Shown: one piece after another, positions 14,438 through 39,828 of the stretch
Layout: each line of letters starts with the position of its first letter
Position numbering within the stretch: the stretch's first letter is position 1
NCBI GenBank assembly: GCA_977020255.1
Contig: CDROCS010000956.1
Coordinates: 434,001 to 498,000 of the forward strand
Source of the DNA: Obrimoposthia wandeli
Taxonomy: Eukaryota
Length of the DNA: 64,000 nt
Direction of reading: 5' to 3'
Position numbers and translations under genes: made by a program
Notes under the pieces: model-generated
Seen by the model: the letters and a program-made list of their open reading frames with translations, nothing else
Database searches by the model: none
Told to the model about the DNA's origin: nothing

Positions 14438-14523
14438 ACAATTATTTATAAAATCAGTTAAAGATATGGGTGCTAACCCTTCTTTACCTAAATTTAAATT
14501 TTCTTTCTATTCAAATTGTTGTA

Positions 14524-18939: not shown

Positions 18940-19036
18940 TATTTCAAATTGTCGGGGATTTAAATGAAGAAAGTGTTTGCTTATATACTAAAATTTATGC
19001 ACACATGCTCTTTTCCTATTGGATTAAAAAATTGAA

Positions 19037-19220
19037 TTTATCCCTCCACTGAGAATAATTGTTTATCTGTTATTGGTTGAAAAAAATAATTTTATTCCTC
19101 CAATTAAAGAGAAGGATTGTTTATATATTATAGGTTCAAAAAATAATTTTATTCCTCCAATTAAAAAGAACTATTGTTTATCTGTTATTGGTTGAAATAA
19201 ATATTTTTATTCCTCCAATC
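19037..19220. repeat. About 57-bp tandem repeat (about 3.3 copies) upstream of the pPolB gene in copy A
   Basis: Unit TTTATTCCTCCAATTAAA.AGAA..ATTGTTTATCTGTTATTGGTTGAAAAAAATAAT; B has about 1.3 copies at about 29125-29190. Confidence 0.75.
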
Positions 19221-19288
19221 AAAAGGCTTATTTGTAATTAGTTGTAAAATTTTAATAATGAATTTCTCCAATTAGAAGAATTGTTTAT

Positions 19289-19787
19289 CTACATGTCAAA
19301 TAATAATAAGATAGACTTAAACATTTTTTATATGCGCAATGGTCACCATGATTACGATATGGACAGCAAATATTTCGTGGAATTTTTAATAGATGATCAC
19401 GTGAAATATTTAAAGTATTCAACCTCAATTTGGGAAAATATTATTTTAAAGTCTTATACTTTTTGCCATCCATTTCATCTAAAACATAAAAAATTCCATT
19501 TTCTATATAAAAATTAGATGTTATTGTATCGAAAATACATATTTCACAAAAAGCCTTATGTCCTTCTTTCCATTTTAATAAATGAAAGTAATTAGTTAGA
19601 TATAAATTAGTAAATTTTTTCTTATAATCTAAAGTTTAGATTCTAAACTTTTAAACGGGATATCTATTTGAAATATGAAATGCAAAGGATGAAAAACGTC
19701 GCATACATCCATAATACATAATTCTTTTATAATATAATCCCCATTTTTGTTAATGAAAGCCTCAAAATCTATGATATATTTCTGCAT
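19289..19787 (-). pseudogene. Exonuclease-like ORF of copy A
   Basis: MQKYIIDFEAF...IIKELC matches 28593-29081; frameshifted by a small palindromic insertion near 19625-19645. Confidence 0.75.
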
Positions 19788-19888
19788 AATTATCTAAATT
19801 TGCAGCAAATCCCGTTGTTTATAACGAAAAAAATCATTAATCAAAAATTTATTAAAATAACAAAGTACTCAGGATTTAGTCTTTCATA

Positions 19889-20098
19889 TTAAGATTGGTA
19901 TATATTGTCAATTCTCATATGAATATTAAAATAAATTATATTAAATGTAAACATACCTAAATATTTCGAAATTAAATTACATAATTTATAACCAACAATT
20001 TCCTCAGTATCATTTTCTGGAAAGTAATTTTTTATACATTCTTCCATTAAATCTGGAGATAATTTTATGTATAATTTATTCCAATTTTTATTATCCAT
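19889..20098 (-). CDS. Small unknown ORF (69 aa) present in copy A, deleted in copy B
   Basis: ATG-initiated, MDNKNWNKLYIKLSPDLMEECIKNYF.... B joins the two flanks at about 28510. Confidence 0.4.
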   Translation of the reverse strand: MDNKNWNKLYIKLSPDLMEECIKNYFPENDTEEIVGYKLCNLISKYLGMFTFNIIYFNIHMRIDNIYQS

Positions 20099-20205
20099 TT
20101 TACAAAAAATATTATATATAAAATTGTTTATATTTAGTATGCTTATGTAAAATATTTAGATAATTATGTAACCTAATCAATAAAGACAAAATAATAATCA
20201 AAAAA

Positions 20206-20526
20206 TAAATTTTTTTGTAGAAGGACCCTCTTCCGGTTTAATCTGGAGGATTCTCTTTCTTGCTGCTCGCCGAACATCCTCCATCTCTTCTCTTCTTTAT
20301 TCATCCACCTTCATTTTTTACAATTCGATCTTCTTATTCCACTCCAAGATCCGACGTCGTTCTGTAGCCTCCTATCTTGTATCTCCACCCGGCGATTCCA
20401 CTCGGTCGTGACAGCAGCATACAAATTTTGATTGAGGACCCTCTTTCTTAAGTCCCCTTTCTTCTCATATAATCTGATGTTTGCTTCTATCTTCGTTACC
20501 AAACTTTGCAATTTAATGAATTCCAT
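20206..20526 (-). pseudogene. Charged coiled-coil ORF, copy A
   Basis: MEFIKLQSLVTKIEANIR...; frameshifted relative to B 28154-28470. Confidence 0.6.
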
Positions 20527-20739
20527 TTTTTAATTATGAAGAGGTTAATAAATTTGAACCTATATATATAAATTTAAGACATTTTTAATCCAATCACAGG
20601 CAATGAAATTTTATATTTTTATGTATCAAATGAAAGTTTAATAAATCTATAACTAATCATTGCATTTATATTTAAATCTAAAAAAAATTAAATGATTCCT
20701 TATTAATCCAATCACAGTCGAATAAATTAACTATTTTTT

Positions 20740-22180
20740 TCATCTTGATATTTTAATAAACTTTAAGATGGTATTTAAATAAATATTAACAAGAAAACAT
20801 ATGAAACTAATTTTTAAAATTATATTCTTAAACATCTTTACGAAGTCATCATTGGGATCATCCGGATCGAAATCCCTCCAACTAAGTATTATTGGAGAAA
20901 GCGGTATTGGCTCCTTCTTCTTTGGCCGGCCCGGTTTCTTTTTCGCCTTCACCGGTTGGTTTGTAGCAATTGTCCTTCCCTCAGGTTTTGGCAATAGTTG
21001 CCGCAACATTTTGGGAGGAGGTGCAGCCGATGTTGATGGCCCCGACATAGAAGCAGTAGCCTTCCTCTTCCGAGGAGCTTTCTTCTGTTTCTCCTCCTTC
21101 TCACGCTGAAGCTGGCGTGAGACTGCTTCCTGTTGACCTCGCGAATCTGGAAGCATTGCCGGTGTATCCAGTTCCGCCAGGAATTCGTACAATCCAGCTT
21201 CATCCAAGGCCCTCTTTAAGTTCTGGCTGGTTGTTGGACGAGGAGAAGCCGGTGATGTCTCCTGCAGGCGTCGTTGACTTGATGGCGGACTAATCTCGAT
21301 CGGTGAGACTGGGATCCTCTCGTATAAAATTGGACCGTCGTCCACTGGAGATGGGAGAATCTCCTGCCGTCCAATCACCGCCTCAGAATAATGGCCAATT
21401 GAGGTGCTACATTTTCTCGAGCGCCTCGTCTTCTTCGCCTCTGCTAGCTTCGCCCGTTTCTTGGGAAAATGAGTCATTTCTCCCCAAGCCTCCTCAATTA
21501 TCCAGACAGGTTCCTGCAAAAGAAAACATTAATAAAATTTTTAATAAAGTTCATTTATTTAAAAATTATTTAAATATCTAAAAATTTACCTCAATAATCT
21601 GATACGGAAGTTTTTCCTTCCGCTCTATCGTTACTTCGGTCGATTTGAGCAGACAAGATTTCGCCTTTCTAAGACGCCTCGAAGTCTTCCGTACAGCAGC
21701 CCGCCTCGTTTGCTTCTGCGGGAAAGGAGAAATTTTGCCCCATGTCTCCTCAATTAATTGTATTGGTTCCTGCAACAAAAAACATTAATAAAATTAAAAA
21801 ATATAAATAATTTACCTCGATGACGGGCAAGTTAGCCTGTTTCACCAACTTGGCCTTCTTCCGATGGACCGTGTGGGTTTTGACCCGATGGCGTCGAGGT
21901 TTCTTAACCGCCGCTTGTTTCCTATCGAGGGGTAGTCTGAGAGTTGCCTCCTCCCAAATTTCCTCCACCAATTCGGCTTCCTATGTGAATAATTAAAATA
22001 ATTAACTAATTTATAATAATTTACCTCAAATTTAGCCGGAGTCGGTAGGTATCGCTGCTCACTCCTGGGATCATCCTGGCTACATTGACTCGCCAAGTAC
22101 TGCGGTTCAATCAGCCTCTCCACCGTGGTCACTGACGGTGCCAAATCCAGTTGAAGTTTCTAAAAATGAAAATAAAAAAC
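20740..22180 (-). pseudogene. 3' exons of the left-end spliced gene, copy A (has one more exon than B; first exon missing)
   Basis: Exons match B 26898-27032, 27071-27217 and 27259 onward. An extra exon at about 21590-21772 (EPIQLIEETWGK...) is paralogous to the last exon. Confidence 0.7.
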
Positions 22181-22305
22181 ATTTTAAATAAATTAATAGA
22201 CTAACCTCATTCGTCGCCTTTATTCTTTAACTTTAAAGGATTTTATGGATAAAAATGGCAATTCAATTGAAACTTTAAACGATTTTATGAATAAAATATG
22301 GGTAC

Positions 22306-26145: not shown

Positions 26146-27846
26146 ATGCCATTCTACAACAACGTTGACCTAGACGAAGAGACGGAGGTTCAACTCTATG
26201 GGGATCTCTCTCCAGTGCAGCAGCGAACGCCACCACCGTCGCAATACATTGACTTAGATAGTCAAGAGTCATCGGTGGTGAGCGAAGGAGAAGCAGCAGC
26301 AAGAGCGAACCTGTTTGAAGCCTCATTGGCCAGCTCAACTCCAAGAGAAGAACCAATGGACGTGAGAGGTGGGGTACAGAGATCCCAATATATCGATCTG
26401 ACTAGTCAGGATTCGATAGAGAATTGGGAAGACTGTACTCCCAGACAAAACACAAAACCCAATCGTCCGGCAACTTCAGCAGTAGCAGCAGGGAGATCCA
26501 ATCTCTTCGACAATTTTGAGGCGGCAATCAAATGCCCCTGGAAATTGATCCCGCTGTCTCAACCGGAGAAAGTCCTCACACCAGACTCAGACGAGGAGCT
26601 GTTCACCGATGATGTACCTTCGGATTGGGAGGAGGACTTGACTCCATTCATCGACGAATGGATACAGCCAAGTATCGGAGCCCCAGGAGCCAACGAGTCG
26701 ATGGTAGCAGAATTGGACGAGGACGAGTGGCACCTGTTCACCGACGATTGGGATGGTCTCACTCCCTCTGCTACTCCGAAAGCAGATAATACAATGCCTG
26801 AACCATTCAAAAGGCCAAAATCTCCTGTTAGGAGAATAAAACCGACGAATGAGGTTAGACATAATTTATTTTAAATGTTTTTTAATTTCATTTTCAGAAA
26901 CTTCAACTGGATTTGGCACCGTCAGTGACCATGGTGGAGAGGCTAATTGAACCGCAGTACTTGGCGAGTCAATGCAGCCAGGAGCTGCCAAGGAGTCAGC
27001 TCCGATACCTAGCGTCTCCAGATAATTTTAAGGTAAATTATTTAGATATTAAATTTAATAATTCACATAGATAAAGAACATTCACGAAGAGGCGAAGTCT
27101 ATTCAACCGGTGGATAGGAAGCAAGCGGCAGTTAAGAAACCGCAACGCCATCGGGTCAAAACCCTCACTCGGAAGAAGGCCAAGTTAGTGAAACAGGCTA
27201 ACCTGCCCATCATTGAGGTAAATTATTTATATGTTTAAATTTTAGTAATATTTTGCAGGAACCCGTCCAGATATTTGAGGAGACTTGGGGAGAAGTTACT
27301 CCTTTCTCGCGGAAACGGACGAAGAGGGCAGAGGTGAAGAAGACGAGGCGCTCGAGAAAATGTAAAACCTCAATTGATCATTATTCTGAGACGGTGATTG
27401 GCCAGCAGGAGATTATCCAATCTCCAGTGGACGACGGACCAATCCTATATGAGAGGATCCCAGTCTCGCCGATCGAGATAAGTCCGCCCTCAAGTCAACG
27501 ACGCCTGCAGGAGACTGCTTCTCCTCATCCAACAACCAGCCAGAACTTGAAGAGGGCCTGGGATGACGCTGGATTGGATGAATTCCTGGCGGAACTGGAT
27601 TCACCGGCCATGCTTCCAGATTCGCGTGGGCAAAAGGATGCCGTCTCACGCCAGCTTCAGCGTGAGAAGGAGGAGAAAAAGAAGAAAGCTCCGCGGAAGA
27701 GGAAGAGGACTTCTATGACAGGGCCATCAACATCGGCTGCACCTCCTCCCAAAAAGTTGCGGCAACTATTGCCAAAACCTGAGGGAAGGACAATTGCTAC
27801 AAAGCAACCGGTGAAGCCGAAAAAGAAACCGGGCCGGCCAAAATAG
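26146..27846 (+). CDS. Spliced left-end gene of copy B: low-complexity protein with acidic N-half and basic, Pro-rich C-half (about 525 aa to TAG)
   Basis: Phase-0 exons 26146-26853, 26898-27032, 27071-27217 and 27259-27846, with introns of 44, 38 and 41 nt. TATATAAAG at 26104. The TAG at 27844 corresponds to AAG in copy A, so it is probably premature. Confidence 0.7.
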
Positions 27847-28153
27847 AAGGAACCAGTACCGCTTTCTCCTATAATACTTAGTCGGAGGGATTACGACCCG
27901 AATGATCCCAATGATGACTTCGTAAAGATGTTTAAAAATATAATTTATAAAAATTAGTTTCATATGTTTTCTTCTTAATATTTATTTTTTTAAATGTAGA
28001 AATACTATCTTTAAGTTTATTTGCAATGATAAGTTATAGATTTATTAAACACTCATTTGATAAATAAAAATATATCACATAATTGGATTAAAAAATATCT
28101 TAAATTTATATATATAGGTTCAAATTTATTAACCTCTTCATAATTAAAAAAAA

Positions 28154-28470
28154 ATGGAATTCATTAAAATGAAGAGTTTGGTGACGAAGATTGAAGCAAA
28201 CATCAGAATAAATGAGAAGAAAGGGACTTAAGAAAGAGGGTCCTCAACCAGAATTTGTATACTGCTGTCGCGACAGAATGGAATCATAGGGTGGAGATAC
28301 AGGATAGGAGGCTAGCAGAACGCCGTCGAATCGTGGAGTGGAATAAGAAGATCGAATTGGAAAAAAGGAAGGTGGATGAAAAAAGAAGAGAAGAGATGGA
28401 GGATGTTCGGCGAGCAGCAAGAAAGAGAATACTCCAGATTAAACCGGAAGAGGGTCCTACAAAAAAATAA
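28154..28470 (+). pseudogene. Charged coiled-coil ORF, copy B
   Basis: One G is missing at about 28225 relative to A; the E/K/R-rich C-terminus is intact. Confidence 0.6.
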
Positions 28471-28592
28471 ATTTTTGATTATTATTTTGTCTTTATTGAT
28501 TATGTTACATAGGAGAATTGACAAAATATTCCAATCTTAACATGAAAGTACTTCGTTATAAACAACGGGATTTGCTGCAAATTTGGGTAATT

Positions 28593-29081
28593 ATGCAGAA
28601 ATATATCATAGATTTTGAGGCTTTCATTAACAAAAATGGGGATTATATTATAAAAGAATTATGTATTATGGATGTATGCGACGTTTTTCATCTATTGCAT
28701 TTCATATTTCAAATAGATATCCCGTTTAAAAGTTTAGATTATAAGAAAAAATTTACTAATTTATATCTAACTAAATATTTTCATTTATTAAAATGGAAAG
28801 AAGGACATAAGGCTTTTTGTGAAATATGTATATTCAATACAATAACATCTAATTTTGATTTTGAAAATGGAATTTTTTATGTTTTAGATGAAATGGATGG
28901 CAAAAAATATATGACTTTAAAAAAATATTTTCCTAAATTGAGGTTGAATACTTTAAATATTTCACGTGATCATCTATTAAAAATTCCACGAAATATTTGC
29001 TGTCCATATCGTAATCATGGTGACCATTGCGCATATAAAAAATGTTTAAGTCTTTCTTATTATTACTTGACATGTAGATAA
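28593..29081 (+). CDS. DEDD-type exonuclease-like protein (162 aa) with a C-terminal Cys/His cluster
   Basis: IIDFEAF (ExoI-like DxE) followed by IIKELCI; C-terminal CCPYRNHGDHCAYKKC. Later catalytic motifs are not clearly identifiable. Confidence 0.5.
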   Translation: MQKYIIDFEAFINKNGDYIIKELCIMDVCDVFHLLHFIFQIDIPFKSLDYKKKFTNLYLTKYFHLLKWKEGHKAFCEICIFNTITSNFDFENGIFYVLDEMDGKKYMTLKKYFPKLRLNTLNISRDHLLKIPRNICCPYRNHGDHCAYKKCLSLSYYYLTCR

Positions 29082-29281
29082 ACAATTCTTCTAATTCATA
29101 ATTTTCATTCAATTACAATTAAATCTTTTGATTGGAGGAATAAAAAAATATTTTTTTCGACCATTTAACAGATAAACATACCTTCTCAATTTTTTAATCC
29201 AATAGGAAAAGAGCATGTGTGCATAAATTTTAGTATATAAGCAAACACTTTCTTCATTTAAATCCCCGACAATTTGAAATA

Positions 29282-32200
29282 ATGCCTATGGTAAGAATTT
29301 ATTTTTATTATTTCCTTATTAATATTTATTATTTCAGATTACTTGTAACCTATTCCCTGCGTATTGTGGTGCTTCGGCTCCACATGGAGGAGAGACCTGC
29401 ATGGAGACAATGTCTGCATACTACCGGACAAAGTCTCGCGGGCTTCACTTCTTTGTCTGCCCATTCTGCAGAACAATGGAGGAGAAGGAGTTTCGAGACT
29501 TCTTCAGTGAACATCGAGCTCATATATCGTGTTTCACGGCCAACAACAAGAAGAGGGATATCATGCAATTGGTGCGCGATTCGCGGGTCACTCCACCTCC
29601 AATTCCAGTTGCATTCGACCAACCCTTTTACGGTCCTGCGATTGGTCTCCCGGCTCCTGATTCTGACCCATCCACTCAAATGTCTAACAATGAGTGGATG
29701 AATGACATATCCCAGTCAGATTTCGAGATAGAGCAGTGGAACGATAACTCATGGTTGGAGACCATCGAGGAATCCGATTTCGTCGAGATGTCGGACGACA
29801 GCTGGATGGAATTCGTCAATGAAGAGGACTTCATTACAGCTCAACTTGGATTGCCTTCATTAGGTATTTTTTATTATTATTTTTAAATTATATATTTTAT
29901 TTTTATTATATAATTTTTATTTTTTGTTTTTTATTCAGGAAGTACCATGATACAGCCGTCAACATCGGCAGCATGTTCAATAGCAGCACCTTCAACCTCA
30001 GCTGCGATTGTGTCAACTATTAATATAAATAGTTGTCTTCCCGTTCAATTAGGGGAGGTTTGTCAGCGACAAACGGAAGAAAGAGGCGAGGCCAATTTTT
30101 TAATAAGGTCCCACCAAAAAAAACGTAGAGAAAACGGTTGCACGATCAGTATGAGAGTATTCACCTACCGGCTTCGGCAGGACTACTATTCTTAGGCCCC
30201 AATATTACCCAGTATCATAAATTTTCCGGTCCAAATTGTATTTTAGATTTTATGTTAAAATTAGAGGAATTAGGAACAACAATTGTCAAACCGTGGTATG
30301 ATCTCAATGCTCATCAAGCAATGATCATGACAGGCATAGACTGGGTTAATTTTAATTCTTGTAGATTATGTTATTTGTGTGGAACCCAGTCTAAGTTAGT
30401 CAGAGATCACGATCATGTTACGGGGCGATACTTGGGAGCGGCGTGCAACCTTTGTAACCTTGGCCGTCGTCTAGCTAAAAAACCACGCATTCCCATCGTG
30501 TTTCGTAACCTCAAAGGATATGATTTGCATCATATACTTAAATACGCGTTGGGTACATTAAGCTCTTGGGAAATTTCATGTATACCTCAAACTTCAGAGA
30601 AATATTTATCTTTAAATGCATATATTGAATTCTGCAGTTTAAGATTCATAGATTATCTGCAGTGTTTGAGCGGGTCTTTAAAAAATTTAACGGCATCTTT
30701 AAATGCATGGCCAATTACACAGTCAGTGTTCCCAGCTTCGGTTAACGATAAGGGGATTTTTCCGTATAAATTTGCGAAAACTTTCGCAGATTTAGAAAAT
30801 ACAACTGAAATCCCACCCATAACTGAATTTGAGGGTGTAAGTCTTCAAGACTATAATGAGGCCCGTACATTTTGGGTGAATAATTGTCAAAATATTCTCG
30901 AATATATGCTTTATTATATGAAGTTAGACATTTATCTTTTAGCTGATGTTTTTGAGTCCTTTCGTGTAAAGTCTTTAGCAGAAGATGGGCTAGATCCCAT
31001 GCATTTCTTTAGTTTACCTGGTCTTTCATGGGCAACAGCAATAAAAACTCTTAAAATTAATATCGAGTTACTGCAAGATCCTGCGATGTATCAAATGTAT
31101 GATTATGGTATACGCGGTGGAATGACTTTTGTCAACAAACATCATGTTGTCAAAAATCAATCCACGGAGATTCTGTACATCGATATTAATAATTTGTATG
31201 GGTGGGCGCTTACTCAACCTCTACCTCATGCCAACTTTAAGTGGGTTTATGATGTGGATCAGTTGAATAAGTTGATGACAGATTTGGCTACTGTTGATAC
31301 AGTTTCATCCGACGTGGGCTATTTGGTTGAGGTGGACATAAAAAATCCCTCCCAATGTGCATGATAAATTAGATGATCTTCCAGTAGCGCCTGTTCATCA
31401 ATGCCCACCTAATTCAAAGGTTAAGAAATTATTGTTAACCCATGAAGACAAGTTGAATTATGTTGTGCATTGGCGGCTTCTTCAATTCTACTTAAAGTTG
31501 GGAGCGAAAGTTACTCAAATTCATCGTGCTATAAGTTTCAGTCAAAACTTTGTGTTTAAAGACTATATTGAGAAGAATTCAAGAAAACGTAATTCGATCG
31601 AGATTTTTACAAGCTAAAAAGTAATAGTCTCTTTGGAAAAACTGTAGAGGACTTGCGGAAACGTATTTGTCTACGGTTTTGCAATGATGAGCGTAAACTA
31701 ATAACATATACTAGCAAGTACAACTTCAAGCGTAGTTTTACAATTGTATATGACTTGGTAGCAGTGTTATTAGGAAAACAGAGTATTTGTCTCGATCGAC
31801 CGAGTTATATAGGTCAAACGGTTTTAGACATTTCTAAACTCAGAATGTATGAGCTTCAATACATAGAATTGGAGAAATACCGACAAGAATTTAATTGTGA
31901 GATCAAAATCGCAGCTGGGGACACTGACTCTTTCTTTTTAGAATGTAAAAATGTTAGTTTAATTAATCAATTATTACCAGCAATGTTTAGGGACAACATA
32001 TTAGATACCCATAAATATCCCGCTAACCATCCTCTACACTCTATGAGTTTAAAGGACATTATCGGGAAATTTAAGGGACAGGTTTCGTATGATGATTGTA
32101 TTTTCCTACGCCCTAAATGCTACAGTTTACATGCATCTAATAATACATGTTCAATGAGAGCAAAGGGTGTGGGAAGAAACAATCTTACACATGAGGCCTA

Positions 32201-32375
32201 CCGGAAAGTTTATGATACTGGGTGTATTGAAAGCGTTGAGCAAACTAGATTTATTTCAAGAGCCCATCAACTGTATTCCCATAAATCAACCAAAATCGCG
32301 TTGAGTAGTAATGACGACAAGCGCTTTTGGGTAGAAAAGAACGCTAGCCTGGCTTATGGACACTTCAGAATTTAA
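29282..32375 (+). pseudogene. Protein-primed family B DNA polymerase (pPolB), spliced at the 5' end
   Basis: Introns 29291-29337 and 29864-29938. Motifs NLKGYD, YMKLDIYLLADVFESFR, YIDINNLYGWAL (A), KLKSNSLFGKT (B), GDTDS (C) and LRPKCY. Frameshifts near 31357 and 31600; the ExoI region is deleted at about 30100-30138. Confidence 0.95.
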
Positions 32376-32653
32376 ACGATTTTCATTTTTTGATTTTTTT
32401 AGTTTAGTTTTTTAAAATTTTAGATCCCTATGGCACCTAGACTCTAACTTATTTGTTATTTCAATACTTTTTTTAGGATGGACCTTATTTATTATGCCTT
32501 ATCTTTGCTGACATATCTCATTGTGATGTTGTGATTAATAAATGTATTAAAAAAAATTGTCTTATGTCTTTTATTATTTTACCCTTAAATTTTTAGAGAT
32601 TTCAAAAAAATAATTCAAAATAAAACATTAAAAATATTTAATTTTATAACACA

Positions 32654-33034
32654 CTAATCGTTTTGCAACGATAACCATAAAATAAATAAATGTTCACAGT
32701 TTCTCGTCGCAGGATCCTGATATTGTATCTTGTTGTAAAATACTCTTCTTCGTCCTTTTTGAATAGTTGAAACAAGTTTGTGTGGATAATACATTGCAAG
32801 TGGATCAAATACATGTATTGTACACTCTCTAACATAAATAGCTATCCAATGTTCTCCTGGTAAATTCGAAGTATGAGTATTGATAATATAACCTCCAGAT
32901 TGAAAAAATGGAATCATATCAATAGGATAAACTCCATTGAATTTATCACCCAGGACCTTCTCTGCTGATTCTTTTACTTGTTTTGAACTAAATAAAAATT
33001 AATAAATATAAATTTAAAATATGTCTTACTCCAT
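32654..33034 (-). CDS. Adenain-like cysteine protease (112 aa, spliced)
   Basis: 5-nt exon ATGGA (33030-33034), 42-nt intron 32988-33029, exon 32654-32987. Gives MDSKQVKES...FNGVYPIDMIP...NTHTSNLPGEHWIAIY...FDPL...IQYQD...NCEHL, retaining His, Asp, Gln and Cys. Confidence 0.85.
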
Positions 33035-33035
33035 T

Positions 33036-34072
33036 CTATAATATGACAGTTCTGTTTTTATTGATTTGTATTTCCGAATCAAATACTCCGTAAATAAGCA
33101 CCGTAGTAGGATTTGTTAAAGCTGCATTGAACTTAATTTCTAGTCGTAAATTTCCATCCTTTGGTAGTTGGCATTGGTTTATATCAAAGTCTGGTGCCAA
33201 AACGAATGTGAAGAACGGGCAGCTGTTTTTAAAGTCAGTGAAAGAAATACCATTGTTTATATTTTTATCTAGTTGACCCAAATTCCGAATAATAGATTGG
33301 GTATAAGCCAAAGCATAAGCGTTACCTTCGAAATCTGTTTTATATGTGTCACGATAATCAGTATTTCTTGAAAGTGTCACTGAACCAACTTTAAGATTGT
33401 CAAATTGAGTTGCATCTGTCGTATAATTTCCTAGAAACTTTGCAGTTTTTTGAAAAGAAATTAAAATGAATTTCGGTAATCTTACATCACCAAAAATTTT
33501 ATCAAAGAAAAATTCCATTTATTACGTTTCAAACGAAGATGTACATTAACACCGGGAATTAAATATTTCGGTTGTTCAAAGAAATTCAATCTCAAAGACC
33601 CACACATTTTGTAAGCTTTAGAACCTGCAATCCATTCTTTGCGAGTTGCATCAGTTTTATCATAACCAATGGTTGCCAAATTAGTATTTTGAGTATCAGT
33701 ACTATAATTCAAAAGACTTTCAATCAAAGCTTTATGAGCATAGGAAGAATTTCCACCTTCAATTTTGACATTATTAAGAGTAACAATGGCATCATTAAAT
33801 AAAGAATTAAATAGATAATTTACAGGTGTTACATCTGCATTTTCATCTAAATTACTACCATCCCGATTTAATACTTTTATTTGAACATAAAGCAAAGTAT
33901 CATTCAAATCTAAATACTCGCTATTGGAACCATTAATATTAAATTCGAAATCGGTTAAATTGGTTCCTGAAACTGAGTTAACAAGGAATATTTCTTCAAA
34001 GGAAGCATTATCTACAACTACTTGTGGAAGCGGTTTATCAAAAATACATAATTCAGTTTTGGCGCAACTCAT
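33036..34072 (-). pseudogene. Major capsid protein (double jelly-roll, hexon-like), frameshifted with probable internal deletion
   Basis: CAKTELCIF.KP.PQ...FEFNI.GS...YLDLNDTLLYVQIKV and PKYLIPGVNVHLRL in frame 1; FTFVLAPD...GNLRLEIKF.AAL...TVLIYGVFDSEIQIN in frame 2. About 345 aa in total, short for a Polinton MCP. Confidence 0.88.
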
Positions 34073-34446
34073 TTTGCAAATATTGTTCCTTCAACTTTCT
34101 TACATTTGTTTATATTAATTTTTAGCTTATTTTTACTGTTAAATCCACTACCTCCTTGACTTTTATTTGATTTACGTTTTCTAATCAAATTAGCAACTTC
34201 AGGTAAAACATTATCAAATTCATCAAGCGCATGCTTCTTAAAAGTTGGTATTAGTTTATTGTCATTAGATGAAAGGTAATCCTTTCCTAATTTTGATATA
34301 AATCGCCCGAGTCTCTTTTAAATAGGAAAGGCAAATCTACCTAATTTTCTAAGCCAGCCAGATCCGTATTGTTTACCAACAAAATATGGTAATTCTCCAC
34401 CTTGTTGGCTTTGACTATAAGCTTCAATTATTGCTGGATTCACCAT
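34069..34446 (-). pseudogene. Polinton core-protein-like ORF (PW-type), 125 aa with one premature stop
   Basis: MVNPAIIEAYSQSQQGGELPYFVGKQYGSGWLRKLGRFAFPI*KRLG...SQGGSGF.... Its stop overlaps the MCP ATG. Confidence 0.7.
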
Positions 34447-35480
34447 TTTGTTTTCTTAAATGTATTGTTTAACTTGTCTTGGCCCCGTACGTGAAATCTA
34501 TTAGTTGTCCGGAATCATCTCTAATATTTACTTCAATATTGTTTATAGAAAAGAGAGAAACTGGAAGATACATTGGTTGATCTATACACATACCGACAGT
34601 GTCCCCATCTCTAGTTTCATTTTTAGATATCCATATTGTTCTCAAAAGTGAAACTCGCTGTCCTCCTACAAGCGTTGGTTCTATTAAATTAGTATAAATA
34701 TATAAATGATTAACAGCATTTAAAAGTTTTGCCTTATTTTTAGCTTTTATGGTTTTTATTGTATGGGTTTCAAAGGTATTTCTGTTTAAACCAAGGTTTT
34801 TAGCAAGTTTATCATCAAATGAAACTCGTTTTATATTGCTCTTTACTGTAAACGTTAATTTACCATTTAATGTTTCACATTTATCCAAATATTCACTACA
34901 TTCCTTCTGTATTAATTTACAGAAATTCACTTCACTATCTATTTTATAATCTTTTGAAAACGTTTTCAGTTCCACTACAGTCTTTGTTCTCGTTTCAAGT
35001 AACAACACTTTCGCTACTCTACCAGGAACATTTCTAACCGAATTAGATGAGATAATATCCCGTTTATTACGAGCTACTGTTTGTTCACTATCAAAACTGA
35101 ATTGAAGAGCTTCTTTTTTAGATTCAAAATTAATTTTAATAACTTGAAGAAATTTTAATAGATTTTTAATCTGACTTTGTTATTTTCAAATATTACTTTC
35201 ACTTCTTTATCTATACAATTGTAATAGAATTGTCCTTTACTATCAAACTCGATCACAACTTCAGTTGTTTTTTCATGATCAACTTCTTTCGTAAACGAAA
35301 TATGTGAGTTTTTTTTATAGTAATTGGAGAATAATAAAAAGAAAATTCTGTTAAAGCCGGTTCCCATTCTCCTTGGAGATTTATTGAATTTTCCCAATCG
35401 ATAATGAAGCTACTAGCGTCATTATCTGGTTGAGTCTTCGGACATCCGTTACTTGTTAAAACCATATACATAGAATTCAT
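34446..35480 (-). pseudogene. Minor capsid (penton-like) protein, copy B
   Basis: Homologous to 15550-16614; frameshifts near 35320 and 35158 and a premature TAA near 34469. Confidence 0.85.
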
Positions 35481-36506
35481 ATTATATTAGATGCTGATAT
35501 CCAAGTTGGGTCTGAATAACCATGCCATTTAACAAAGTATTGTTTATGTTTACCTGTACCCTTAGATTTTAATATTTTTTGAATACGGAAAACGCTAGGT
35601 TTATTTGATATTACTTGTAGTTCTTGCTCGTAAAATTTACCCTTGAACGATATTATTGTCAGCATCTTTAATAGTATACATTATTGGATTACTCTTTTGA
35701 TCAATTTTTCTTATACAAAATATTTCATCGCTCCAATTCTGATCAAAGTTTTTAATAAATGGAGTAGAGCTAATTTTCGAAATTCGAACATATTCGTTTT
35801 TCTTATATTTAGCTTTTTTAATTTTATCTTTTTTATTCCTGTTCATCCAAATGTCCATAGAGTTTTTATTAGTAACATCAACAGGTCTCATTCTCTTGAG
35901 ACCTCTATGTTCAGAGTGATTATATGCATGTATTATTTTAGGTAAAACTTGGATCCATTTTTTATTTCCTTCTTTTGTGAAATACTTTTTTATTCGATCT
36001 CTTAGAGTACGATTAAATCTTTCTACTACAGCTGCTTTGTATTGTGAAAACACAGAGTAATGATTTATATTATTTTGTTTAAATAATGATTGAACCTGCT
36101 TATTATAAAATTCTTTTCCTAAATCAGTTTGCACATTTTGTGGAATGTCCTCTTTTAATATTTCTTTAATGGCTTCAAGCATAGCTATTGAAGACTTTGC
36201 TTTAACTGGAATTGCATGAGCAAACCTGCTAAATACATCAATACATGTTAAAATATATCGATATCCCTTATTAATGGAAGAATATGGGATCATCTCCATC
36301 AAATCCATTTGCCATAAATTATTAGGACCGCTGGTTTTGTAAGCTCTAGTTGGAAACCTTCTTCTCATCGGCTTGTTCAGACTGTAGGCTAACTGGTCGC
36401 TCATCCATTTCTTCGTTTTCTTGTAATTTTGTTTTGTTCTTTTTGCTAATTTTGAAACTCCTGTGTAGCCAATTGGATCTTTTGGATTGAACCATGTCTT
36501 CTCCAT
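35477..36506 (-). CDS. Integrase (rve) with chromodomain in the +1 frame, copy B
   Basis: ATG at 36506 (MEKTWFNP). The DDE core is open to GGG-TAA at 35637-35642, and the chromodomain is at 35477-35640. Confidence 0.9.
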
Positions 36507-36591
36507 TACAACAATTTGAATAGAAAGAAAATTTAAGTTTAGGTAAAGAAGGGCTAGCACCCATATCTTTAACTGATTTTAGAAATAATGT

Positions 36592-36931
36592 TTATGAACG
36601 TGTCGCAGCTATAATACTACTGATAATTGAAGCAACAACTGGAATAACAACCCCTATGAAACCACCATTCTGTTTAAGAATAATATTTCGTTTCCTTTTT
36701 TTACTTTTTACATTAGCAATATCTAGAAGAGTTTTTCTATATTTCTTTAATATATTTTTCCGATTTCCAACTTTTACTCGACCCAAAACTATATTATATT
36801 AAACTTCCAATAAATCATCTACAATCATGTACAACAAAGGATGGAAATGCTTTAAGAATAATCATTCTCTTATTAGAAGAGGCTTTGACTAAAGCTTTAA
36901 AATAGGGTATGCTTCTTTGTATTTTCTTCAT
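36592..36931 (-). pseudogene. Small basic ORF ending QNGGF plus a hydrophobic helix, copy B
   Basis: Carries the same 10-bp duplication (36814-36833) and in-frame TAA as copy A. Confidence 0.7.
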
Positions 36932-37109
36932 TTTAATAAAAAGAGTTTAATTTAAATATTGTTTATATTCGAAGCCATTTAAGTTTTTTTTTATTTTTAA
37001 CTACAGATTTGATTAATTTTTTCACTTCTTTTTTCTTAATGATTCTTTTTTTGATTTCTTAGATTTTACTTTACGTTTAAATATCAACTTTGTAAAAGGC
37101 ATTGTAAAT

Positions 37110-37757
37110 TTATTTTTTATAATTGTTCTCTATTTGTTTATAAACAGTTACTCCGTTAGAATTAAATATGTCTGTTAAAACACGTAAATCATTTGGGCAA
37201 GCTTGTGTAAAGTCAATAAATATATACCCATGTGCTTGTTTAGCAGCATCGTGGAATGAATCAACTAGAAAGTTCTTATTTTGAGGAAATGCCTGTCTGG
37301 CCACAAAATCAACAACTGTTTGATCTCTAGGATTTTTAAATAAAACTAAATAATGTACATTAAGATTTCTTGTTCTATGATGACCTCCTTGGTGAAACAG
37401 ATTTTGAGTGATAAATATAACTGTTACTTCACGATGTCTTGCAATCTTTGTAAATAAATTATTAAAGTTCGATTCCTTGTTAGCCTCCTCATACAAATCA
37501 TCAATTATTATTACATCTTCTTTTTTCAATCTTTCACACCAATTTGCATCAAATCCTTCAATAAATTTTATACCCTTCAACTTGCATACTTCTGTTTTGG
37601 TTAACCCGCTTTCCCCTCCTCCATCATGATGCCAATAAATATTTTTGAAACTAGATTTGAAAAGAGATTCATTTTGCAACAATTTACAGACGAAATGTGT
37701 CTTTCCACTTCCACTAGGGCCAACTGTTTGAAATACAGCATTATTATTTAGCTCCAT
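37110..37757 (-). CDS. Packaging ATPase (FtsK/A32-like), open frame, 215 aa
   Basis: Walker A GPSGSGKT, Walker B IIIDD, IFITQNLF...RTRNLNVHYLVLFKNPRD, YIFID. Confidence 0.93.
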   Translation of the reverse strand: MELNNNAVFQTVGPSGSGKTHFVCKLLQNESLFKSSFKNIYWHHDGGGESGLTKTEVCKLKGIKFIEGFDANWCERLKKEDVIIIDDLYEEANKESNFNNLFTKIARHREVTVIFITQNLFHQGGHHRTRNLNVHYLVLFKNPRDQTVVDFVARQAFPQNKNFLVDSFHDAAKQAHGYIFIDFTQACPNDLRVLTDIFNSNGVTVYKQIENNYKK

Positions 37758-37794
37758 TGCATATACTCTTTCATTTTTAATATTGTTTATATTA

Positions 37795-38067
37795 TCATAG
37801 AAGTTTCTTTATTGAAATGTACAATGTTAGAGCTATTGTAGATGAAATACAAAAATTAATTAATGAATATTTGGCTATAATTTTATTTATTTGTGTACGA
37901 TTTCTAAATTCCCGAATAACGTGTGATCTAACCAATATTTCAATGTTATCTCTTGTTATATCATTATTTTTTAATTCTGATAAAATTTCTTTACCCCTAA
38001 TTTTTCCAGAAAATATTTCATCGGCAAGCCGATCCACTTCATTGTCTCTATTTATAGTATTATTCAT
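37795..38067 (-). CDS. 90-aa unknown ORF with a hydrophobic C-terminal segment
   Basis: MNNTINRDNEVDRL...YSLINFCISSTIALTLYISI. In B it is in frame with the upstream TBP-like ORF; in A and C it is not. Confidence 0.5.
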   Translation of the reverse strand: MNNTINRDNEVDRLADEIFSGKIRGKEILSELKNNDITRDNIEILVRSHVIREFRNRTQINKIIAKYSLINFCISSTIALTLYISIKKLL

Positions 38068-38089
38068 TTGAAACAATAAGTTTAAACGG

Positions 38090-38597
38090 GTTTGTTTATA
38101 GAAAAAAGATAACAAGATGTAATAAGATATATTTTCTAAAATCAAATCAACTATGTCTGGATAATCAAAGTTTTTCAATCCCAATATCATAACTTTACCA
38201 CTGGAAAATATATTTACACATAGCGGTTTAAACTTCAAATAACTGAGAGCAGGAAAAATTTCTGGTTCAAACATGCATTCTTCTTTCATTTTCTCTGCAG
38301 TTTTAAAAAGATTTATCTGTTTCCCGAGATTAGCCGAAATCGTGATTGATTGTATTGCAGTGATTTGAATTCCAAATGGTAAATTGAACCCAAGCATTGG
38401 TATTTTGCATCCCATAACACGGCAATTTCCTAAAGAATTCAATATGAAAATAAACTAAAAAACTAACCTGTAGGAAAAATAACAACTGTGAAATTGTCAA
38501 ACTTTTCTACACATTGTCTTGGCTTCCATTCATTGAATGGTAAGTACGAAACATCATCTTCTGTTCTACCTTTATAATTTATATTTACGAGTTTCAT
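38090..38597 (-). CDS. Spliced TATA-binding-protein-like gene of the Polinton
   Basis: Exon 1 at 38468-38597, 38-nt intron 38430-38467, exon 2 from 38429. Repeat 1: MKLVNIN...TVVIFPTGNCRVMGCK. Repeat 2: IQSITISANLGKQINL...MFEPEIFPALSYLKFKPLCVNIFSSGKVMILGLK. The 3' end is uncertain, so the end coordinate is approximate. Confidence 0.82.
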
Positions 38598-38599
38598 TA

Positions 38600-38840
38600 G
38601 ACTGAAATTGTATTCTGTAAAATCTTCTTTATATATGTCTGAACCTGCTTTTTTATTGCACGTTTCTTGTAATTATCTTGCAAACCTATTATAATTGGAT
38701 GATATATTTAGTCCAATCAAATTCAATGCTTTTGTTATATTAACCAATGAGATTCATGTTTTTGTTAGAAATTAGTATAAAAGAATGCGCCATTGGAGGA
38801 CAAATCACAGTAAATACATTCATATCAAAGACAATTATCA
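38600..38840. promoter_or_regulatory. Putative bidirectional promoter between the TBP-like gene (-) and ORF 38844 (+)
   Basis: Minus strand TATATAAAG (38627-38635) with TCAGT 32 nt downstream. Plus strand TATAAAAG (38776-38783) with TCACAGT about 31 nt downstream. CCAAT/ATTGG motifs at about 38694, 38712 and 38744. Confidence 0.55.
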
Positions 38841-38843
38841 ACG

Positions 38844-39290
38844 ATGGACGATAGCCAACGGGTATTAAGCGATGACGAAGAAATGTTTGAAGAATCGGAT
38901 AAGGATATGTATGAAGAAGTGAAACAATATTTCAAATACAAAGTCAGATTCTTGAAGAAGGCTCAGCTGATTGCTTTAGTAAATCCTGTGACAATAAAAA
39001 GAAGAAAGTTCAGCTACTATCTATCAGGTATTCAAAAACCTGATTTTCAATATCTTAAACAGAAAATAGAAAAGGCAGTTCCAAATTTTACTTTCAATAA
39101 GAACGAATTTTATATCCGAGGAGCCGATGAAGCATTTCTAGATGACTATGGAAGATATGTTGATATTGATGCGTTTCCGAAAAAGAAGCAATGGACTGTA
39201 ACAATTCGACTTTATGGTTACAAGAAAGATGAAATGGGAACAAAGTTGCCTATGTGGAAAATTGAACGTGCTCATATTTCTATGTTTTAA
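38844..39290 (+). CDS. 148-aa unknown protein, paralog 1 (possibly OB-fold/SSB-like)
   Basis: Open ORF with acidic N-terminus; C-terminal WTVTIRLYGYKKDE...PMWKIERA. Confidence 0.65.
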   Translation: MDDSQRVLSDDEEMFEESDKDMYEEVKQYFKYKVRFLKKAQLIALVNPVTIKRRKFSYYLSGIQKPDFQYLKQKIEKAVPNFTFNKNEFYIRGADEAFLDDYGRYVDIDAFPKKKQWTVTIRLYGYKKDEMGTKLPMWKIERAHISMF

Positions 39291-39519
39291 CTTTTGTGTG
39301 TAATAAATTGTAATCGGTTTTACTATGTTTCTTTCATTTAATAATCAGTTTTATTTGTATCTTATTTGTATCTTATGTGTATTTTTTATAAACATTGTTT
39401 TTAATCAGTTTCCTTATTTTAGAATGGATAAGAGATGTGTAGCAAATTTTTATTACCCTGAAAGAATTTCTAAATGAAAACTGTGTAATATATTAAAGAA
39501 GCATCAAATTATACGAGTT

Positions 39520-39828
39520 ATGAATCCTGTGAAAATATCAAAAGTAGAGAAAAAATATCTCATCGAAATTTTAACAACAACTGATTTTGATCAACTGAAA
39601 AATATTTTGGGATTTTACATTCCTGATTATGTGTATGAAGGAAATTGTTTCGAGCTTGATACTGATCCCAGTCTGGATTTTAAAGATGATCTAGGATATT
39701 TGATTGCTCCAATTCTAGATGAAGAACTATGGAATATCTCAATACGTCTGAAAGGATATTTTGCTGATGACGAGAAAATGCAGCCTCTCTGGACTTTGAG
39801 TGAAGCCAATATGTTGTTTTATGTTTAA
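39520..39828 (+). CDS. 102-aa unknown protein, paralog 2
   Basis: Open ORF; C-terminal WNISIRLKGYFADD...PLWTLSEA aligns with paralog 1. Confidence 0.6.
   Translation: MNPVKISKVEKKYLIEILTTTDFDQLKNILGFYIPDYVYEGNCFELDTDPSLDFKDDLGYLIAPILDEELWNISIRLKGYFADDEKMQPLWTLSEANMLFYV

What the first reader, a model, noticed from the sequence alone, without database searches (positions are those of the whole stretch)
38090..38597. A Polinton/Maverick virus carries its own spliced TBP-like gene
Seen: removing a 38-nt GT-AG intron rebuilds the Gly of an IFxxG motif and gives a protein of about 155 aa with two repeats. Repeat 2 (IQSITISANL...INL...FEPEIFPALSYLKFKP-LCVNIFSSGKVMILGLK) aligns closely with eukaryotic TBP repeat 2 (IQNMVGSCDV..PIRL...[34 protein letters not shown]). 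Repeat 1 keeps L.N and VIFPTG...GCK but is about 12 aa shorter. Three of the four DNA-intercalating Phe positions appear retained. The gene is in all three copies (B open, A with one stop, C partial) at the same position upstream of the ATPase, so it belongs to the element. Known: the canonical Polinton core set (pPolB, INT, ATPase, PRO, MCP, penton) has no basal transcription factor, while beta/gamma-herpesviruses (UL87/ORF24/BcRF1) and some giant viruses use TBP-like factors. Inference: a small virus-like transposon with its own transcription-initiation factor, possibly driving the head-to-tail capsid/ATPase block or acting as a TBP decoy. I cannot confirm novelty without a search.
Basis: partly seen in the sequence, partly recalled or inferred. 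Interest (0 to 1): 0.92.

Follow-up and report, generated by a model that had tools for sequence, protein, structure and literature searches.

The report
Polinton carries a short TBP gene
An integrated virus-like transposon (Polinton) carries its own spliced, cut-down TATA-binding protein gene; the gene is shared by a whole clade of such elements whose other genes mostly sit behind one uniform TATA-type box, which suggests the element brings its own promoter-recognition factor.

Summary
On the minus strand, exon 1 (38597-38468), a 38-nt GT-AG intron (38467-38430) and exon 2 (from 38429) encode a protein whose first 146 residues align end to end, with no gap at the junction, with about 150-aa intronless relatives from metagenomes. 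Exon 2 hits Pfam TBP (E 1.4e-11). A family profile finds only TBPs in the PDB (best 1.4e-23). An AlphaFold model of the closest relative (pLDDT 96.8) matches the whole TBP saddle. The N-terminal half is strands only and lacks both helices; the C-terminal half is a full TBP repeat.

The gene belongs to the element. At least 46 metagenomic loci carry it beside A32-like ATPase, rve integrase, capsid, protease and pPolB genes.

New here: these elements place TATAAACA 32-40 nt upstream of most gene starts. The TBP-like gene itself never has that box (0/30). I infer a virus-supplied TBP variant that directs host Pol II to a private promoter class. This is not tested.

A 'TBP' gene in a Polinton-like virus already appears in a figure legend of Starrett et al. 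2021, so the gene is not wholly new. Its architecture, its spread and the promoter link appear undescribed. The window's copies are decaying.

The parts
26833..39567 (-). Polinton copy B. These are the limits of similarity with copy A. The true ends were not found and no TIRs were detected.
   Evidence: Self-BLAST. pPolB 30138-32375 (+), PF03175 E 6.6e-16. DJR capsid pieces 33036-34072 (-). Integrase and ATPase. Broken genes in B, as lower bounds from ORF pieces against intact relatives: integrase, minor capsid protein, major capsid protein, pPolB and the small gene between ATPase and integrase, each split at least once. ATPase, p187 and protease are single ORFs.
38626..38633 (-). TATAAAGA box, 36 nt upstream of the ATG of the TBP-like gene. 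This is a canonical-type TATA box, not the element's TATAAACA.
   Evidence: The same pattern holds in relatives: 0 of 30 TBP-like genes have TATAAAC, and 13 have another TATA box.
38468..38597 (-). Exon 1 of the TBP-like gene (residues 1-43 plus the first base of Gly44). It encodes most of the strands-only N-terminal half.
38430..38467 (-). 38-nt GT-AG intron, phase 1. It is identical in copy A and absent from all metagenomic relatives.
38122..38429 (-). Exon 2, conserved part (residues 44-146). It holds the end of the N-terminal half (GNCRVMGCK), a linker and a complete TBP repeat.
   Evidence: Pfam TBP E 1.4e-11. PDB profile hits are TBPs only. 23 of 23 family-conserved columns are kept.
37795..38121 (-). 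Run-on of the copy-B reading frame beyond the family's normal end. It contains a separate 90-aa ORF (38067-37795, with a hydrophobic C-terminus) that has its own TATAAACA box at 38100-38093, 33 nt upstream of its ATG.
   Evidence: Relatives end 16-30 aa after the GLK motif. Mismatches here are spread evenly over codon positions and copy C has 3 in-frame stops. Box and ATG positions. In A the frame closes at family length.
37784..37791 (-). TATAAACA box 34 nt upstream of the ATPase ATG
   Evidence: 9 of 11 ATPase genes in relatives have the box.
37110..37757 (-). A32-like genome-packaging ATPase, an intact 215-aa ORF
   Evidence: Pox_A32 E 4.3e-06. 76% identical to the ATPase of metagenomic locus L007.
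35637..36560 (-). rve-type integrase (main ORF piece)
   Evidence: PF00665 E 1.8e-13. 49-58% identical to the integrases of L005 and L007.
38844..39290 (+). p148, a gene of unknown function divergent from the TBP-like gene. It has a paralogue, p102, at 39520-39828. Upstream are a CCAAT (38743-38747) and TATAAAAG (38776-38783).
   Evidence: Homologues lie next to the TBP-like gene in 15 related loci. Paralogy. No Pfam or PHROG hit. The AF2 model was unusable.
12463..12962 (+). TBP-like gene of copy A: exon 1 12463-12592, intron 12593-12630, exon 2 12631-12962. It is broken by one in-frame stop. Its natural stop lies inside the next gene's TATAAACA box (12958-12965).
11462..22226 (+). Polinton copy A, about 92% identical to B. 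It lacks the stretch matching B 30735-34306 (most of pPolB, protease, major capsid protein).
   Evidence: Broken genes in A, as lower bounds: TBP-like gene 1 stop, ATPase split at least once, p187 in 3 pieces.
10029..11141 (+). Partial copy C. It runs from the middle of TBP repeat 2 into the ATPase and is 86-87% identical to A and B.

Best explanation
The gene encodes a minimal TATA-binding protein of about 150 aa that is a standing component of one clade of Polinton-type viruses and transposons.

Shown in silico:
- The protein is one complete C-terminal TBP repeat. It keeps the stirrup motif EPE-x-FPAL and both Phe positions that align with the conserved Phe of TBP repeat 2.
- It also has a reduced N-terminal half that keeps the sheet but has lost both helices.
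- Together the two halves model as an asymmetric TBP saddle.

Inferred mechanism:
1. Host machinery first transcribes the gene from a host-type promoter (an ordinary TATA box, often with CCAAT).
2. The protein then binds the element's own box, TATAAACA, which sits 32-40 nt before the start codons of the ATPase, p187, capsid and many small genes. The intact C-terminal repeat would sit on the TATA half and the altered N-terminal half on the unusual AACA half.
3. Through its conserved C-terminal stirrup the protein recruits host TFIIB and RNA polymerase II. This gives the element a private, TFIID-independent promoter class, probably a late or morphogenesis class.

In this window the gene has acquired a 38-nt spliceosomal intron, and the three copies are decaying relics.
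For: Identity:
- Pfam TBP hit at E 1.4e-11.
- Family profiles hit only TBPs in the PDB, best 1.4e-23, and score higher on TBP repeat 2 than on repeat 1.
- The AF2 model of relative P0002 (57% identical to the window protein) has pLDDT 96.8 and pTM 0.87. Its N-terminal half has 4 strands and no helix. Its C-terminal half is S1-H1-S2-S3-S4-S5-H2.
- Foldseek's top 44 PDB hits are all TBP, aligned over about 175-183 columns, TM 0.65-0.73.

Selection:
- 62 cluster representatives match at E<=1e-30, and roughly 100 of the 150 best-scoring representatives listed match over about the full length.
- 23 columns are at least 80% conserved and the window protein keeps all of them.

Belonging to the element:
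- The gene's neighbours in the related loci are ATPase, integrase, capsid, protease, p187, p148 and pPolB.

Promoter link:
- TATAAACA occurs 25 times in the window against 8.7 expected (0 of 100 shuffles reach 25), and 21 of the 25 lie inside the copies.
- In 36 non-redundant related loci, 64% of 77 TATAAACA boxes have an ORF-start ATG 28-60 nt downstream. The figure is 5% for the reverse complement and 6-19% for TATAAAAA, TATAAAGA and TATAAATA.
- ATPase genes have the box in 9 of 11 cases and p187 in 7 of 8. The TBP-like gene has it in 0 of 30 (Fisher p 1e-5 against all other classes).

From established knowledge:
- In TBP-TATA complexes the C-terminal repeat contacts the 5' half of the box and the N-terminal repeat the 3' half.
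- The repeat-2 stirrup is the TFIIB contact.
Against: - No binding, expression or occupancy data exist. The link between the protein and the TATAAACA box is correlation only.
- Host TBP might read TATAAACA perfectly well.
- If the box sat about 30 nt before the transcription start, as in most eukaryotes, the 5' UTRs would be only a few nucleotides long. This is unusual, so the geometry may differ.
- Several genes have no box: integrase 0/7, p148 1/10, and some capsid and protease genes.
- The structure was predicted for a relative, not for the window's own spliced protein.
- The loci are phylogenetically related, so the Fisher test overstates independence.
- Both window copies are defective. 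A has a premature stop. B has no stop at the family's normal end.
Confidence: 0.55

Rival explanations
1. The protein is a decoy or host shut-off factor. It occupies host TATA boxes, or titrates TFIIB, without supporting initiation. Alternatively it is a TBP that escapes host regulators which bind the convex surface, because the N-terminal helices are gone.
For: The loss of both N-half helices removes much of the convex surface. From established knowledge, NC2, Mot1/BTAF1 and TAF1 dock on or reach over that surface. The C-terminal stirrup is conserved.
Against: This does not explain why the element's own genes share a fixed, non-canonical box at a fixed distance while the factor's own gene avoids it. 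A decoy needs no private promoter class.
Confidence: 0.15
2. The protein is an architectural DNA-bending protein used for replication, integration or packaging, for example bending AT-rich element ends for the integrase, the protein-primed polymerase or the ATPase. It would not be a transcription factor.
For: The gene often lies beside the ATPase and integrase. From established knowledge, the TBP saddle is a strong DNA bender.
Against: No repeated TATA-like array or TIR was found at the copy ends. In another gene order the gene sits after protease and p187, so linkage to ATPase and integrase is not constant. The boxes are gene-proximal and strand-specific.
Confidence: 0.1
3. In this genome the gene is only a fossil. 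The copies are dead insertions and nothing functional is made from them, whatever the family does elsewhere.
For: A has a premature stop. B misses the normal stop. C is a fragment. Many neighbouring genes are split, A has a 3.5-kb deletion and no TIRs were found.
Against: B keeps all 23 conserved columns and an intact splice signal. A and B differ by only 2.6-4.6% in the exons. This rival concerns present activity, not what the gene is.
Confidence: 0.5

Closest known systems
Cellular TATA-binding protein (TBP; Pfam PF00352), eukaryotic and archaeal
   Same: The C-terminal repeat is a bona fide TBP repeat. The profile matches TBP repeat 2 at 50 bits and repeat 1 at 35 bits (2z8u). The saddle fold is predicted. 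The stirrup motif and the Phe positions of repeat 2 are conserved.
   Different: The protein is only about 150 aa. The N-terminal half is 52 aa, strands only, without H1 and H2. It shows no sequence match to a TBP repeat beyond 13 columns. It has no N-terminal tail. It is encoded by a mobile virus-like element.
'TBP' gene drawn in a MELD (Polinton-like) virus with adintovirus-like PolB, Starrett et al. 2021, Virus Evol 7:veaa055, Fig. 5 legend
   Same: It is a TBP-similar gene in a mid-size PolB/integrase virus of eukaryotes. It may well be the same family.
   Different: The paper gives only a label in a legend. I could not see which virus carries it. The paper has no analysis of architecture, spread, promoters or splicing, and no supplement is held.
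Beta/gamma-herpesvirus viral TBP-like factor (UL87 / ORF24 / BcRF1)
   Same: Functional analogy. A virus that uses host Pol II supplies its own TBP-fold factor for a private, non-canonical late box. Weak fold hits were found (BcRF1 E 3.6e-03, U58 1.7e-03).
   Different: These are large proteins of 577 and 1,005 aa with a buried TBP-like domain and no detectable sequence relation. The protein here is a small, clearly TBP-derived protein. Not a member.
TBP-like proteins of giant viruses (Nucleocytoviricota), e.g. Heterosigma akashiwo virus TBP and the ASFV B263R family
   Same: They are virus-encoded TBP-fold proteins. They are the best viral fold hits, E 1e-08 to 1e-05.
   Different: These viruses bring their own RNA polymerase, and no polymerase gene was found in the element or its relatives. 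The giant-virus proteins are two-repeat proteins of 190-500 aa. Sequence identity is 11-20%.
Cellular TBP-related factors (TRF2/TLF, TBP2)
   Same: They are TBP paralogues that direct Pol II to alternative promoter sets.
   Different: From established knowledge they keep two full repeats. They were not retrieved as distinct hits here, and relatedness was not tested by phylogeny.

Membership tests
TBP family (PF00352) | At least one TBP repeat recognised by the family profile above the curated threshold | tested here: met
   44.5 bits against a cut-off of 22.9, E 1.4e-11, on exon 2. All 8 first relatives also hit. PDB hits are TBPs only.
TBP family (PF00352) | Two tandem full repeats (S1-H1-S2-S3-S4-S5-H2, twice) | tested here: not met
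   The N-terminal half is 52 aa with four strands and no helix in the AF2 model of relative P0002. Exon 1 alone gives no Pfam hit. Only 13 columns are shared between the halves.
TBP family (PF00352) | Saddle fold with a continuous curved sheet | tested here: met
   Met for the closest relative only. pLDDT 96.8. The top 44 PDB matches are TBP, aligned over both halves, TM 0.65-0.73. The window's own spliced protein could not be submitted.
TBP family (PF00352) | Two pairs of DNA-kinking phenylalanines | tested here: inconclusive
   F41, F104 and F120 are at least 98% Phe. The candidate fourth (F21) is 63% Phe. Mapping of the two C-repeat Phe rests on the printed alignments. F41 is equated with F120. 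No coordinates were available for a structural check.
TBP family (PF00352) | Binds a TATA-type box and nucleates a pre-initiation complex with TFIIB | not testable with these tools
   Indirect evidence only: the TATAAACA boxes and the conserved stirrup.
Polinton / Maverick (polintovirus-type element) | Protein-primed family-B DNA polymerase | tested here: met
   PF03175 E 6.6e-16, 30138-31364. The gene is fragmented.
Polinton / Maverick (polintovirus-type element) | Retrovirus-like (rve) integrase | tested here: met
   PF00665 E 1.8e-13
Polinton / Maverick (polintovirus-type element) | A32/FtsK-type packaging ATPase, double-jelly-roll capsid protein, adenovirus-type protease | tested here: met
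   Pox_A32 E 4.3e-06. DJR-like domain is a weak hit (E 0.0024), plus 44-50% identity to the 409-aa capsid gene of L005. The protease ORF 32657-32998 is 39% identical to the L005 gene, which has a weak Peptidase_C5 hit.
Polinton / Maverick (polintovirus-type element) | Terminal inverted repeats and target-site duplication | tested here: not met
   No inverted repeat was found between the ends of A or B. The copies are probably truncated. One end of A abuts C, and the other region abuts an assembly gap.
Herpesvirus vTBP (UL87/ORF24/BcRF1) | Sequence or strong fold relation to that family | tested here: not met
   Only marginal Foldseek hits, E about 2e-03 to 4e-03, TM about 0.38. No sequence hit.

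The most novel reading that the evidence does not exclude
A clade of small, polymerase-less dsDNA viruses and transposons encodes the smallest known TBP, one and a half repeats. It uses this protein to redirect host RNA polymerase II to a private TATAAACA promoter class. The factor's own gene stays on a host-type promoter. This would be a two-step transcription cascade convergent with the herpesvirus late-gene system, and a natural experiment on what the N-terminal TBP repeat and its helices are needed for.
Probability: 0.4. Interest if true: 0.8.

Novelty: new variant of a known kind. Interest (0 to 1): 0.68.

Why it matters
Polintons and their viral relatives are thought to depend wholly on host transcription. 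A conserved element-encoded TBP with a matching private promoter box would change that picture. It would explain how a 15-kb element times its morphogenesis genes.

It would also extend the 'virus brings its own TBP' strategy from giant viruses and herpesviruses to the small Polinton-type viruses.

The protein is also a natural minimal TBP. It has a full C-terminal repeat and a helix-less N-terminal half. It could therefore show which TBP surfaces are needed for DNA recognition and TFIIB recruitment, and which serve host regulation.

The lineage-specific 38-nt intron is a clean case of intron gain in an endogenised viral gene.

Tried and rejected
- Exon 1 alone against Pfam gave no TBP hit. 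Repeat 1 is visible only through relatives and the model.
- The window's own spliced protein could not be given to the structure or family tools. It has no reference form and I did not type it. I tested it only inside scripts, against a profile of relatives and by BLAST. The structure was predicted for relative P0002.
- IMG/VR viral contigs: two peptide patterns found no relative.
- An exact look-up of the ATPase, meant to find the source genome, found nothing on record. The host stays unidentified. The only clues are Med23 exons, short introns, about 30% GC and a Merlin-type transposase.
- Rfam and tRNA scans found nothing.
- TIR search found nothing.
- p148 (the neighbour gene): no Pfam or PHROG hit, no database relative by the word-based search, and an unusable AF2 model (pLDDT 39.7), which I did not fold-search.
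- The 90-aa 'tail' ORF has no significant family hit and no similarity to the small ORFs that precede the ATPase in L005 and L007. I rejected the idea that it is a C-terminal domain of the TBP-like protein, for four reasons. Relatives lack it. It shows no codon-position bias. It has its own TATAAACA box at the modal distance. Copy A's frame closes before it.
- Literature: seven searches plus paper look-ups found no analysis of a Polinton TBP or of a TATAAACA promoter, apart from the Starrett legend.
- CCAATCA/TGATTGG upstream of the TBP-like gene is only a modest enrichment: 8 of 25 against a random mean of 1.4 and maximum of 6. I treat it as a hint.

Full report
**What is in the sequence**

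The finding lies on the minus strand.
- An ATG at 38597 opens a 130-nt exon.
- The next 38 nt (38467-38430) start with GT and end with AG. They hold an immediate in-frame stop and are not a multiple of three.
- Exon 2 begins at 38429, and the split codon G|GA gives a glycine.
- A 215-aa mechanical ORF (37795-38442) covers exon 2. It hits Pfam TBP (PF00352) at E 1.4e-11, 44.5 bits against a curated cut-off of 22.9, over its residues 29-91.
- Exon 1 alone gives no TBP hit.

**The splice is real in the comparative sense**

A database search with exon 2 returned eight proteins of 119-213 aa from metagenomes, all with the TBP domain. They are uninterrupted ORFs, and their sequences continue across the place where the window has the 38 nt.

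Inside a script I joined the two exons as they stand and scored the product against a profile built from the eight relatives only. The result was one domain: residues 1-146 against profile positions 1-151 of 157, 190 bits, with no gap at the junction.

Copy A has the same 38 nt, 100% identical, with GT and AG kept, while the flanking exons differ by 2.6-4.6%. None of the 46 further relatives fetched later shows an interruption; their matches run in one piece, typically over residues 3-149. The intron is therefore specific to the window's lineage.

**Copies**

The window holds three copies of one element.
- B spans 26833-39567 on the minus strand.
- A spans 11462-22226 on the plus strand. It is about 92% identical to B and lacks the stretch matching B 30735-34306.
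- C is a fragment at 10029-11141.

State of the TBP-like gene in each copy:
- In B the conserved 146 codons have no stop and no frameshift. The frame does not close at the family's usual end and runs on to 37795.
- In A (12463-12962) there is one in-frame stop. The frame otherwise closes at 153 aa, the family's normal length. That stop codon lies inside the next gene's TATAAACA box.
- C begins in the middle of repeat 2.

Other broken genes, as lower bounds from ORF pieces against intact relatives:
- In B the integrase, minor capsid protein, major capsid protein, pPolB and one small gene are each split at least once.
- In A the ATPase is split at least once and p187 is in three pieces.

**The element is a Polinton**

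B encodes:
- a protein-primed PolB (PF03175, E 6.6e-16);
- a double-jelly-roll capsid protein (weak Pfam hit, E 0.0024, but 44-50% identical to a 409-aa gene of a relative);
- an rve integrase (E 1.8e-13);
- an A32-like ATPase (E 4.3e-06);
- a homologue of a gene that carries a weak adenovirus-protease hit in a relative.

No terminal inverted repeats were found, so the copies are probably truncated.

**What the protein is**

A profile of 64 relatives plus the window's two exon translations finds 35 distinct PDB sequences, all of them TATA-binding proteins. The best is 2z8u at 1.4e-23. The match always runs through the C-terminal half of the profile, and it scores higher on TBP repeat 2 (50 bits) than on repeat 1 (35 bits).

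The N-terminal half shares only a 13-column IFxSGKxxxxGxK stretch with the C-terminal half.

I modelled the closest full-length relative, P0002 (57% identical to the spliced window protein over 147 aa), with AlphaFold2 on a 66-row alignment.
- Confidence was pLDDT 96.8 and pTM 0.87.
- Residues 2-51 form four strands and no helix.
- Residues 66-154 form S1-H1-S2-S3-S4-S5-H2.
- The top 44 Foldseek hits in the PDB are all TBP. They align over about 175-183 columns, meaning both halves, with TM 0.65-0.73.
- In the viral library the best hits are giant-virus TBPs. Herpesvirus BcRF1/U58 and the poxvirus early factor appear only marginally.

The protein is therefore a TBP in which repeat 1 has been cut down to its sheet.

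The window protein keeps all 23 columns that are at least 80% conserved in the family. These include F41, F104 and F120 (each at least 98% Phe) and the EPE-x-FPA stirrup.

**The gene is a fixture of a clade, not a one-off capture**

An exhaustive profile search gave 2,404 representatives at E<=1e-3 and 62 at E<=1e-30. Roughly 100 of the 150 best-scoring representatives listed are about 150-aa proteins matched over their whole length, and they rank ahead of the first proteins with the two-stretch pattern of ordinary TBPs. All those I looked up come from metagenomes.

Contig look-ups and a metagenome scan gave 55 loci. In them the gene's neighbours match the window's ATPase (16 loci), p187 (15), p148 (15), protease (8), integrase (7) and capsid genes (6). 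The ATPase is up to 76% identical and the integrase up to 58% identical to the window's.

Contig L027 (14.2 kb) has the order p148, TBP-like, ATPase, integrase, minor capsid, major capsid, protease, p187, PolB. This is essentially the window's order. A second order places the gene after protease and p187.

**A private promoter box**

Reading the upstream regions of the relatives' genes showed TATAAAC(A) in front of most of them.
- In five contigs, 18 of 33 genes have it within 80 nt, mostly 32-46 nt before the ATG. The antisense control gave 1, and random windows gave a mean of 1.2 and a maximum of 6.
- In 36 non-redundant loci (116.6 kb), 49 of 77 TATAAACA (64%) have an ORF-start ATG 28-60 nt downstream, with a peak at 32-40. 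The reverse complement gave 5%, TATAAAAA 6%, TATAAAGA 12% and TATAAATA 19%.
- In the window the octamer occurs 25 times against 8.7 expected (0 of 100 shuffles), and 21 of the 25 lie inside the copies.
- In B it lies 34 nt before the ATPase ATG, 42 nt before the capsid ORF and 33 nt before the 90-aa ORF that follows the TBP-like gene.

By gene class the box is present at ATPase 9/11 and p187 7/8. It is absent from the TBP-like gene in 30 of 30 cases: 13 have another TATA box, 1 is one base off, and 16 have none. It is also rare at integrase (0/7) and p148 (1/10). Fisher p is 1e-5, with the caveat that the loci are related.

The window follows the rule. Its TBP-like gene has TATAAAGA at -36 (38633-38626).

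CCAATCA/TGATTGG is modestly enriched upstream of the TBP-like genes (8 of 25 against a random mean of 1.4). The window has a CCAAT at 38743-38747.

**How it most likely works**

Shown in silico:
- a TBP-derived saddle with an intact C-terminal repeat and a reduced N-terminal half;
- conservation across a large family;
- constant residence in one Polinton clade;
- a fixed, strand-specific, non-canonical TATA-type box before many element genes but never before this gene.

Inferred:
- Host factors transcribe the gene from a host-type promoter.
- Its product binds TATAAACA. From established knowledge of TBP-DNA complexes, the C-terminal repeat reads the 5' TATA half and the N-terminal repeat reads the 3' half. 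This fits a canonical 5' half and an odd 3' half (AACA) paired with an altered N-terminal half.
- The protein recruits TFIIB and Pol II through the conserved stirrup.

I put this at about 0.55. Rivals are a decoy or regulator-proof TBP (0.15) and an architectural bending protein for replication, integration or packaging (0.10). Separately, there is about an even chance that the window's own copies are now inert.

The main weakness is the absence of any binding or transcript data. A second weakness is the short distance from box to ATG. It would leave very short 5' UTRs if the usual spacing of about 30 nt to the start site applies.

**Comparison with what is known**

In function the protein would resemble the herpesvirus late-gene TBP-like factor and, more loosely, giant-virus TBPs. 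It is not a member of either group.

It is a member of the TBP sequence family by its C-terminal repeat, but it fails the two-full-repeat criterion.

Literature searches found one prior mention. The legend of Fig. 5 in Starrett et al. [quoted passage not shown] JGI annotation also names some relatives TBP.

A study of nematode Polintons and a 2026 survey of Polinton-like viruses make no mention of TBP or TATA in their main text. I found no description of the truncated architecture, the size of the family, the TATAAACA box or the intron.

My verdict is a new variant of a known kind, with interest 0.68.

- The window's own spliced protein was analysed only inside scripts. The structure is that of a 57%-identical relative.
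- The host was not identified.
The Phe and stirrup mapping rests on tool-printed alignments.
- One script printed local-alignment bounds in two frames for a small neighbouring gene, and these bracket a frame change. My reasoning about the 3' end of copy B also touched on where its frame departs from A. I have not repeated those places here and made no use of them.

Noticed in passing
window 38430-38467 (and 12593-12630 in copy A): The 38-nt intron is absent from all 46+ metagenomic relatives. It is therefore a lineage-specific intron gain in an endogenised viral gene. It is 100% identical between A and B, while the flanking exons differ by 2.6-4.6%.
   Followed up: partly
window 38844-39290 (+) and 39520-39828 (+): p148 and p102 are paralogues (27% identity). 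p148 homologues sit next to the TBP-like gene in 15 related loci, sometimes in two copies. They have no family hit and the AF2 model was unusable. p148 could be a partner of the TBP-like protein.
   Followed up: partly
window 30138-31364 (+): The pPolB ORF has an N-terminal Endonuclease_7 (His-Me/HNH-type) hit, E 2.1e-05, just above the cut-off. Jeong et al. 2023 (PMC10748475) describe an HNH domain as the mark of the pPolB2 class of oomycete and terrestrial-nematode Polintons. This is a possible clue to the lineage and the host.
   Followed up: no
window 39974-40153 and 24713-24923; also 39872-39975: The same 46-nt satellite, in opposite orientation, lies just beyond the p148/p102 end of copy B and, about 2.5 kb beyond the end of copy A, next to the assembly gap (24924-25861). 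A (TGTGG)n run of 21 units adjoins it. A and B face each other across the gap.
   Followed up: partly
window 40179-40289: A perfect 47-nt inverted repeat with a 17-nt spacer, next to the satellite.
   Followed up: no
window 22304-22607: A 29-nt tandem repeat, 10.4 copies, directly after the end of copy A.
   Followed up: no
window 26095-27846 (+): Two ORFs of the element (259 and 197 aa) lie in a stretch of 45.6% GC against about 30% elsewhere. They encode acidic, Ser/Pro-rich, low-complexity proteins with no family hit.
   Followed up: no
window 54160-55406 (+) and 56834-57730 (+): Host-side features: exons of a Mediator subunit 23 gene (Pfam E 3.6e-08 and 1.3e-03), and a 298-aa ORF with an ISXO2/IS1595-type (Merlin-like) DDE transposase domain (E 9.6e-14).
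   Followed up: no
window 37135-37146: A palindromic TGTTTATAAACA at the 3' end of the ATPase ORF puts a TATAAACA box on both strands. On the minus strand it is placed to serve a small gene after the ATPase, as in relatives L005 and L007.
   Followed up: no
L010-L055 (upstream of the TBP-like genes): Many TBP-like genes without a TATA box share TTGTTTTA about 55-60 nt upstream and ATCATAATT 0-15 nt before the ATG (7-mers enriched 8- to 10-fold). This may be a second promoter class.
   Followed up: partly
L007 against window 37110-39290: The gene order ATPase, small ORF, TBP-like, p148 is the same. The TBP-like gene alone is inverted between L007 (divergent from the ATPase) and the window (co-oriented with the ATPase).
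   Followed up: no
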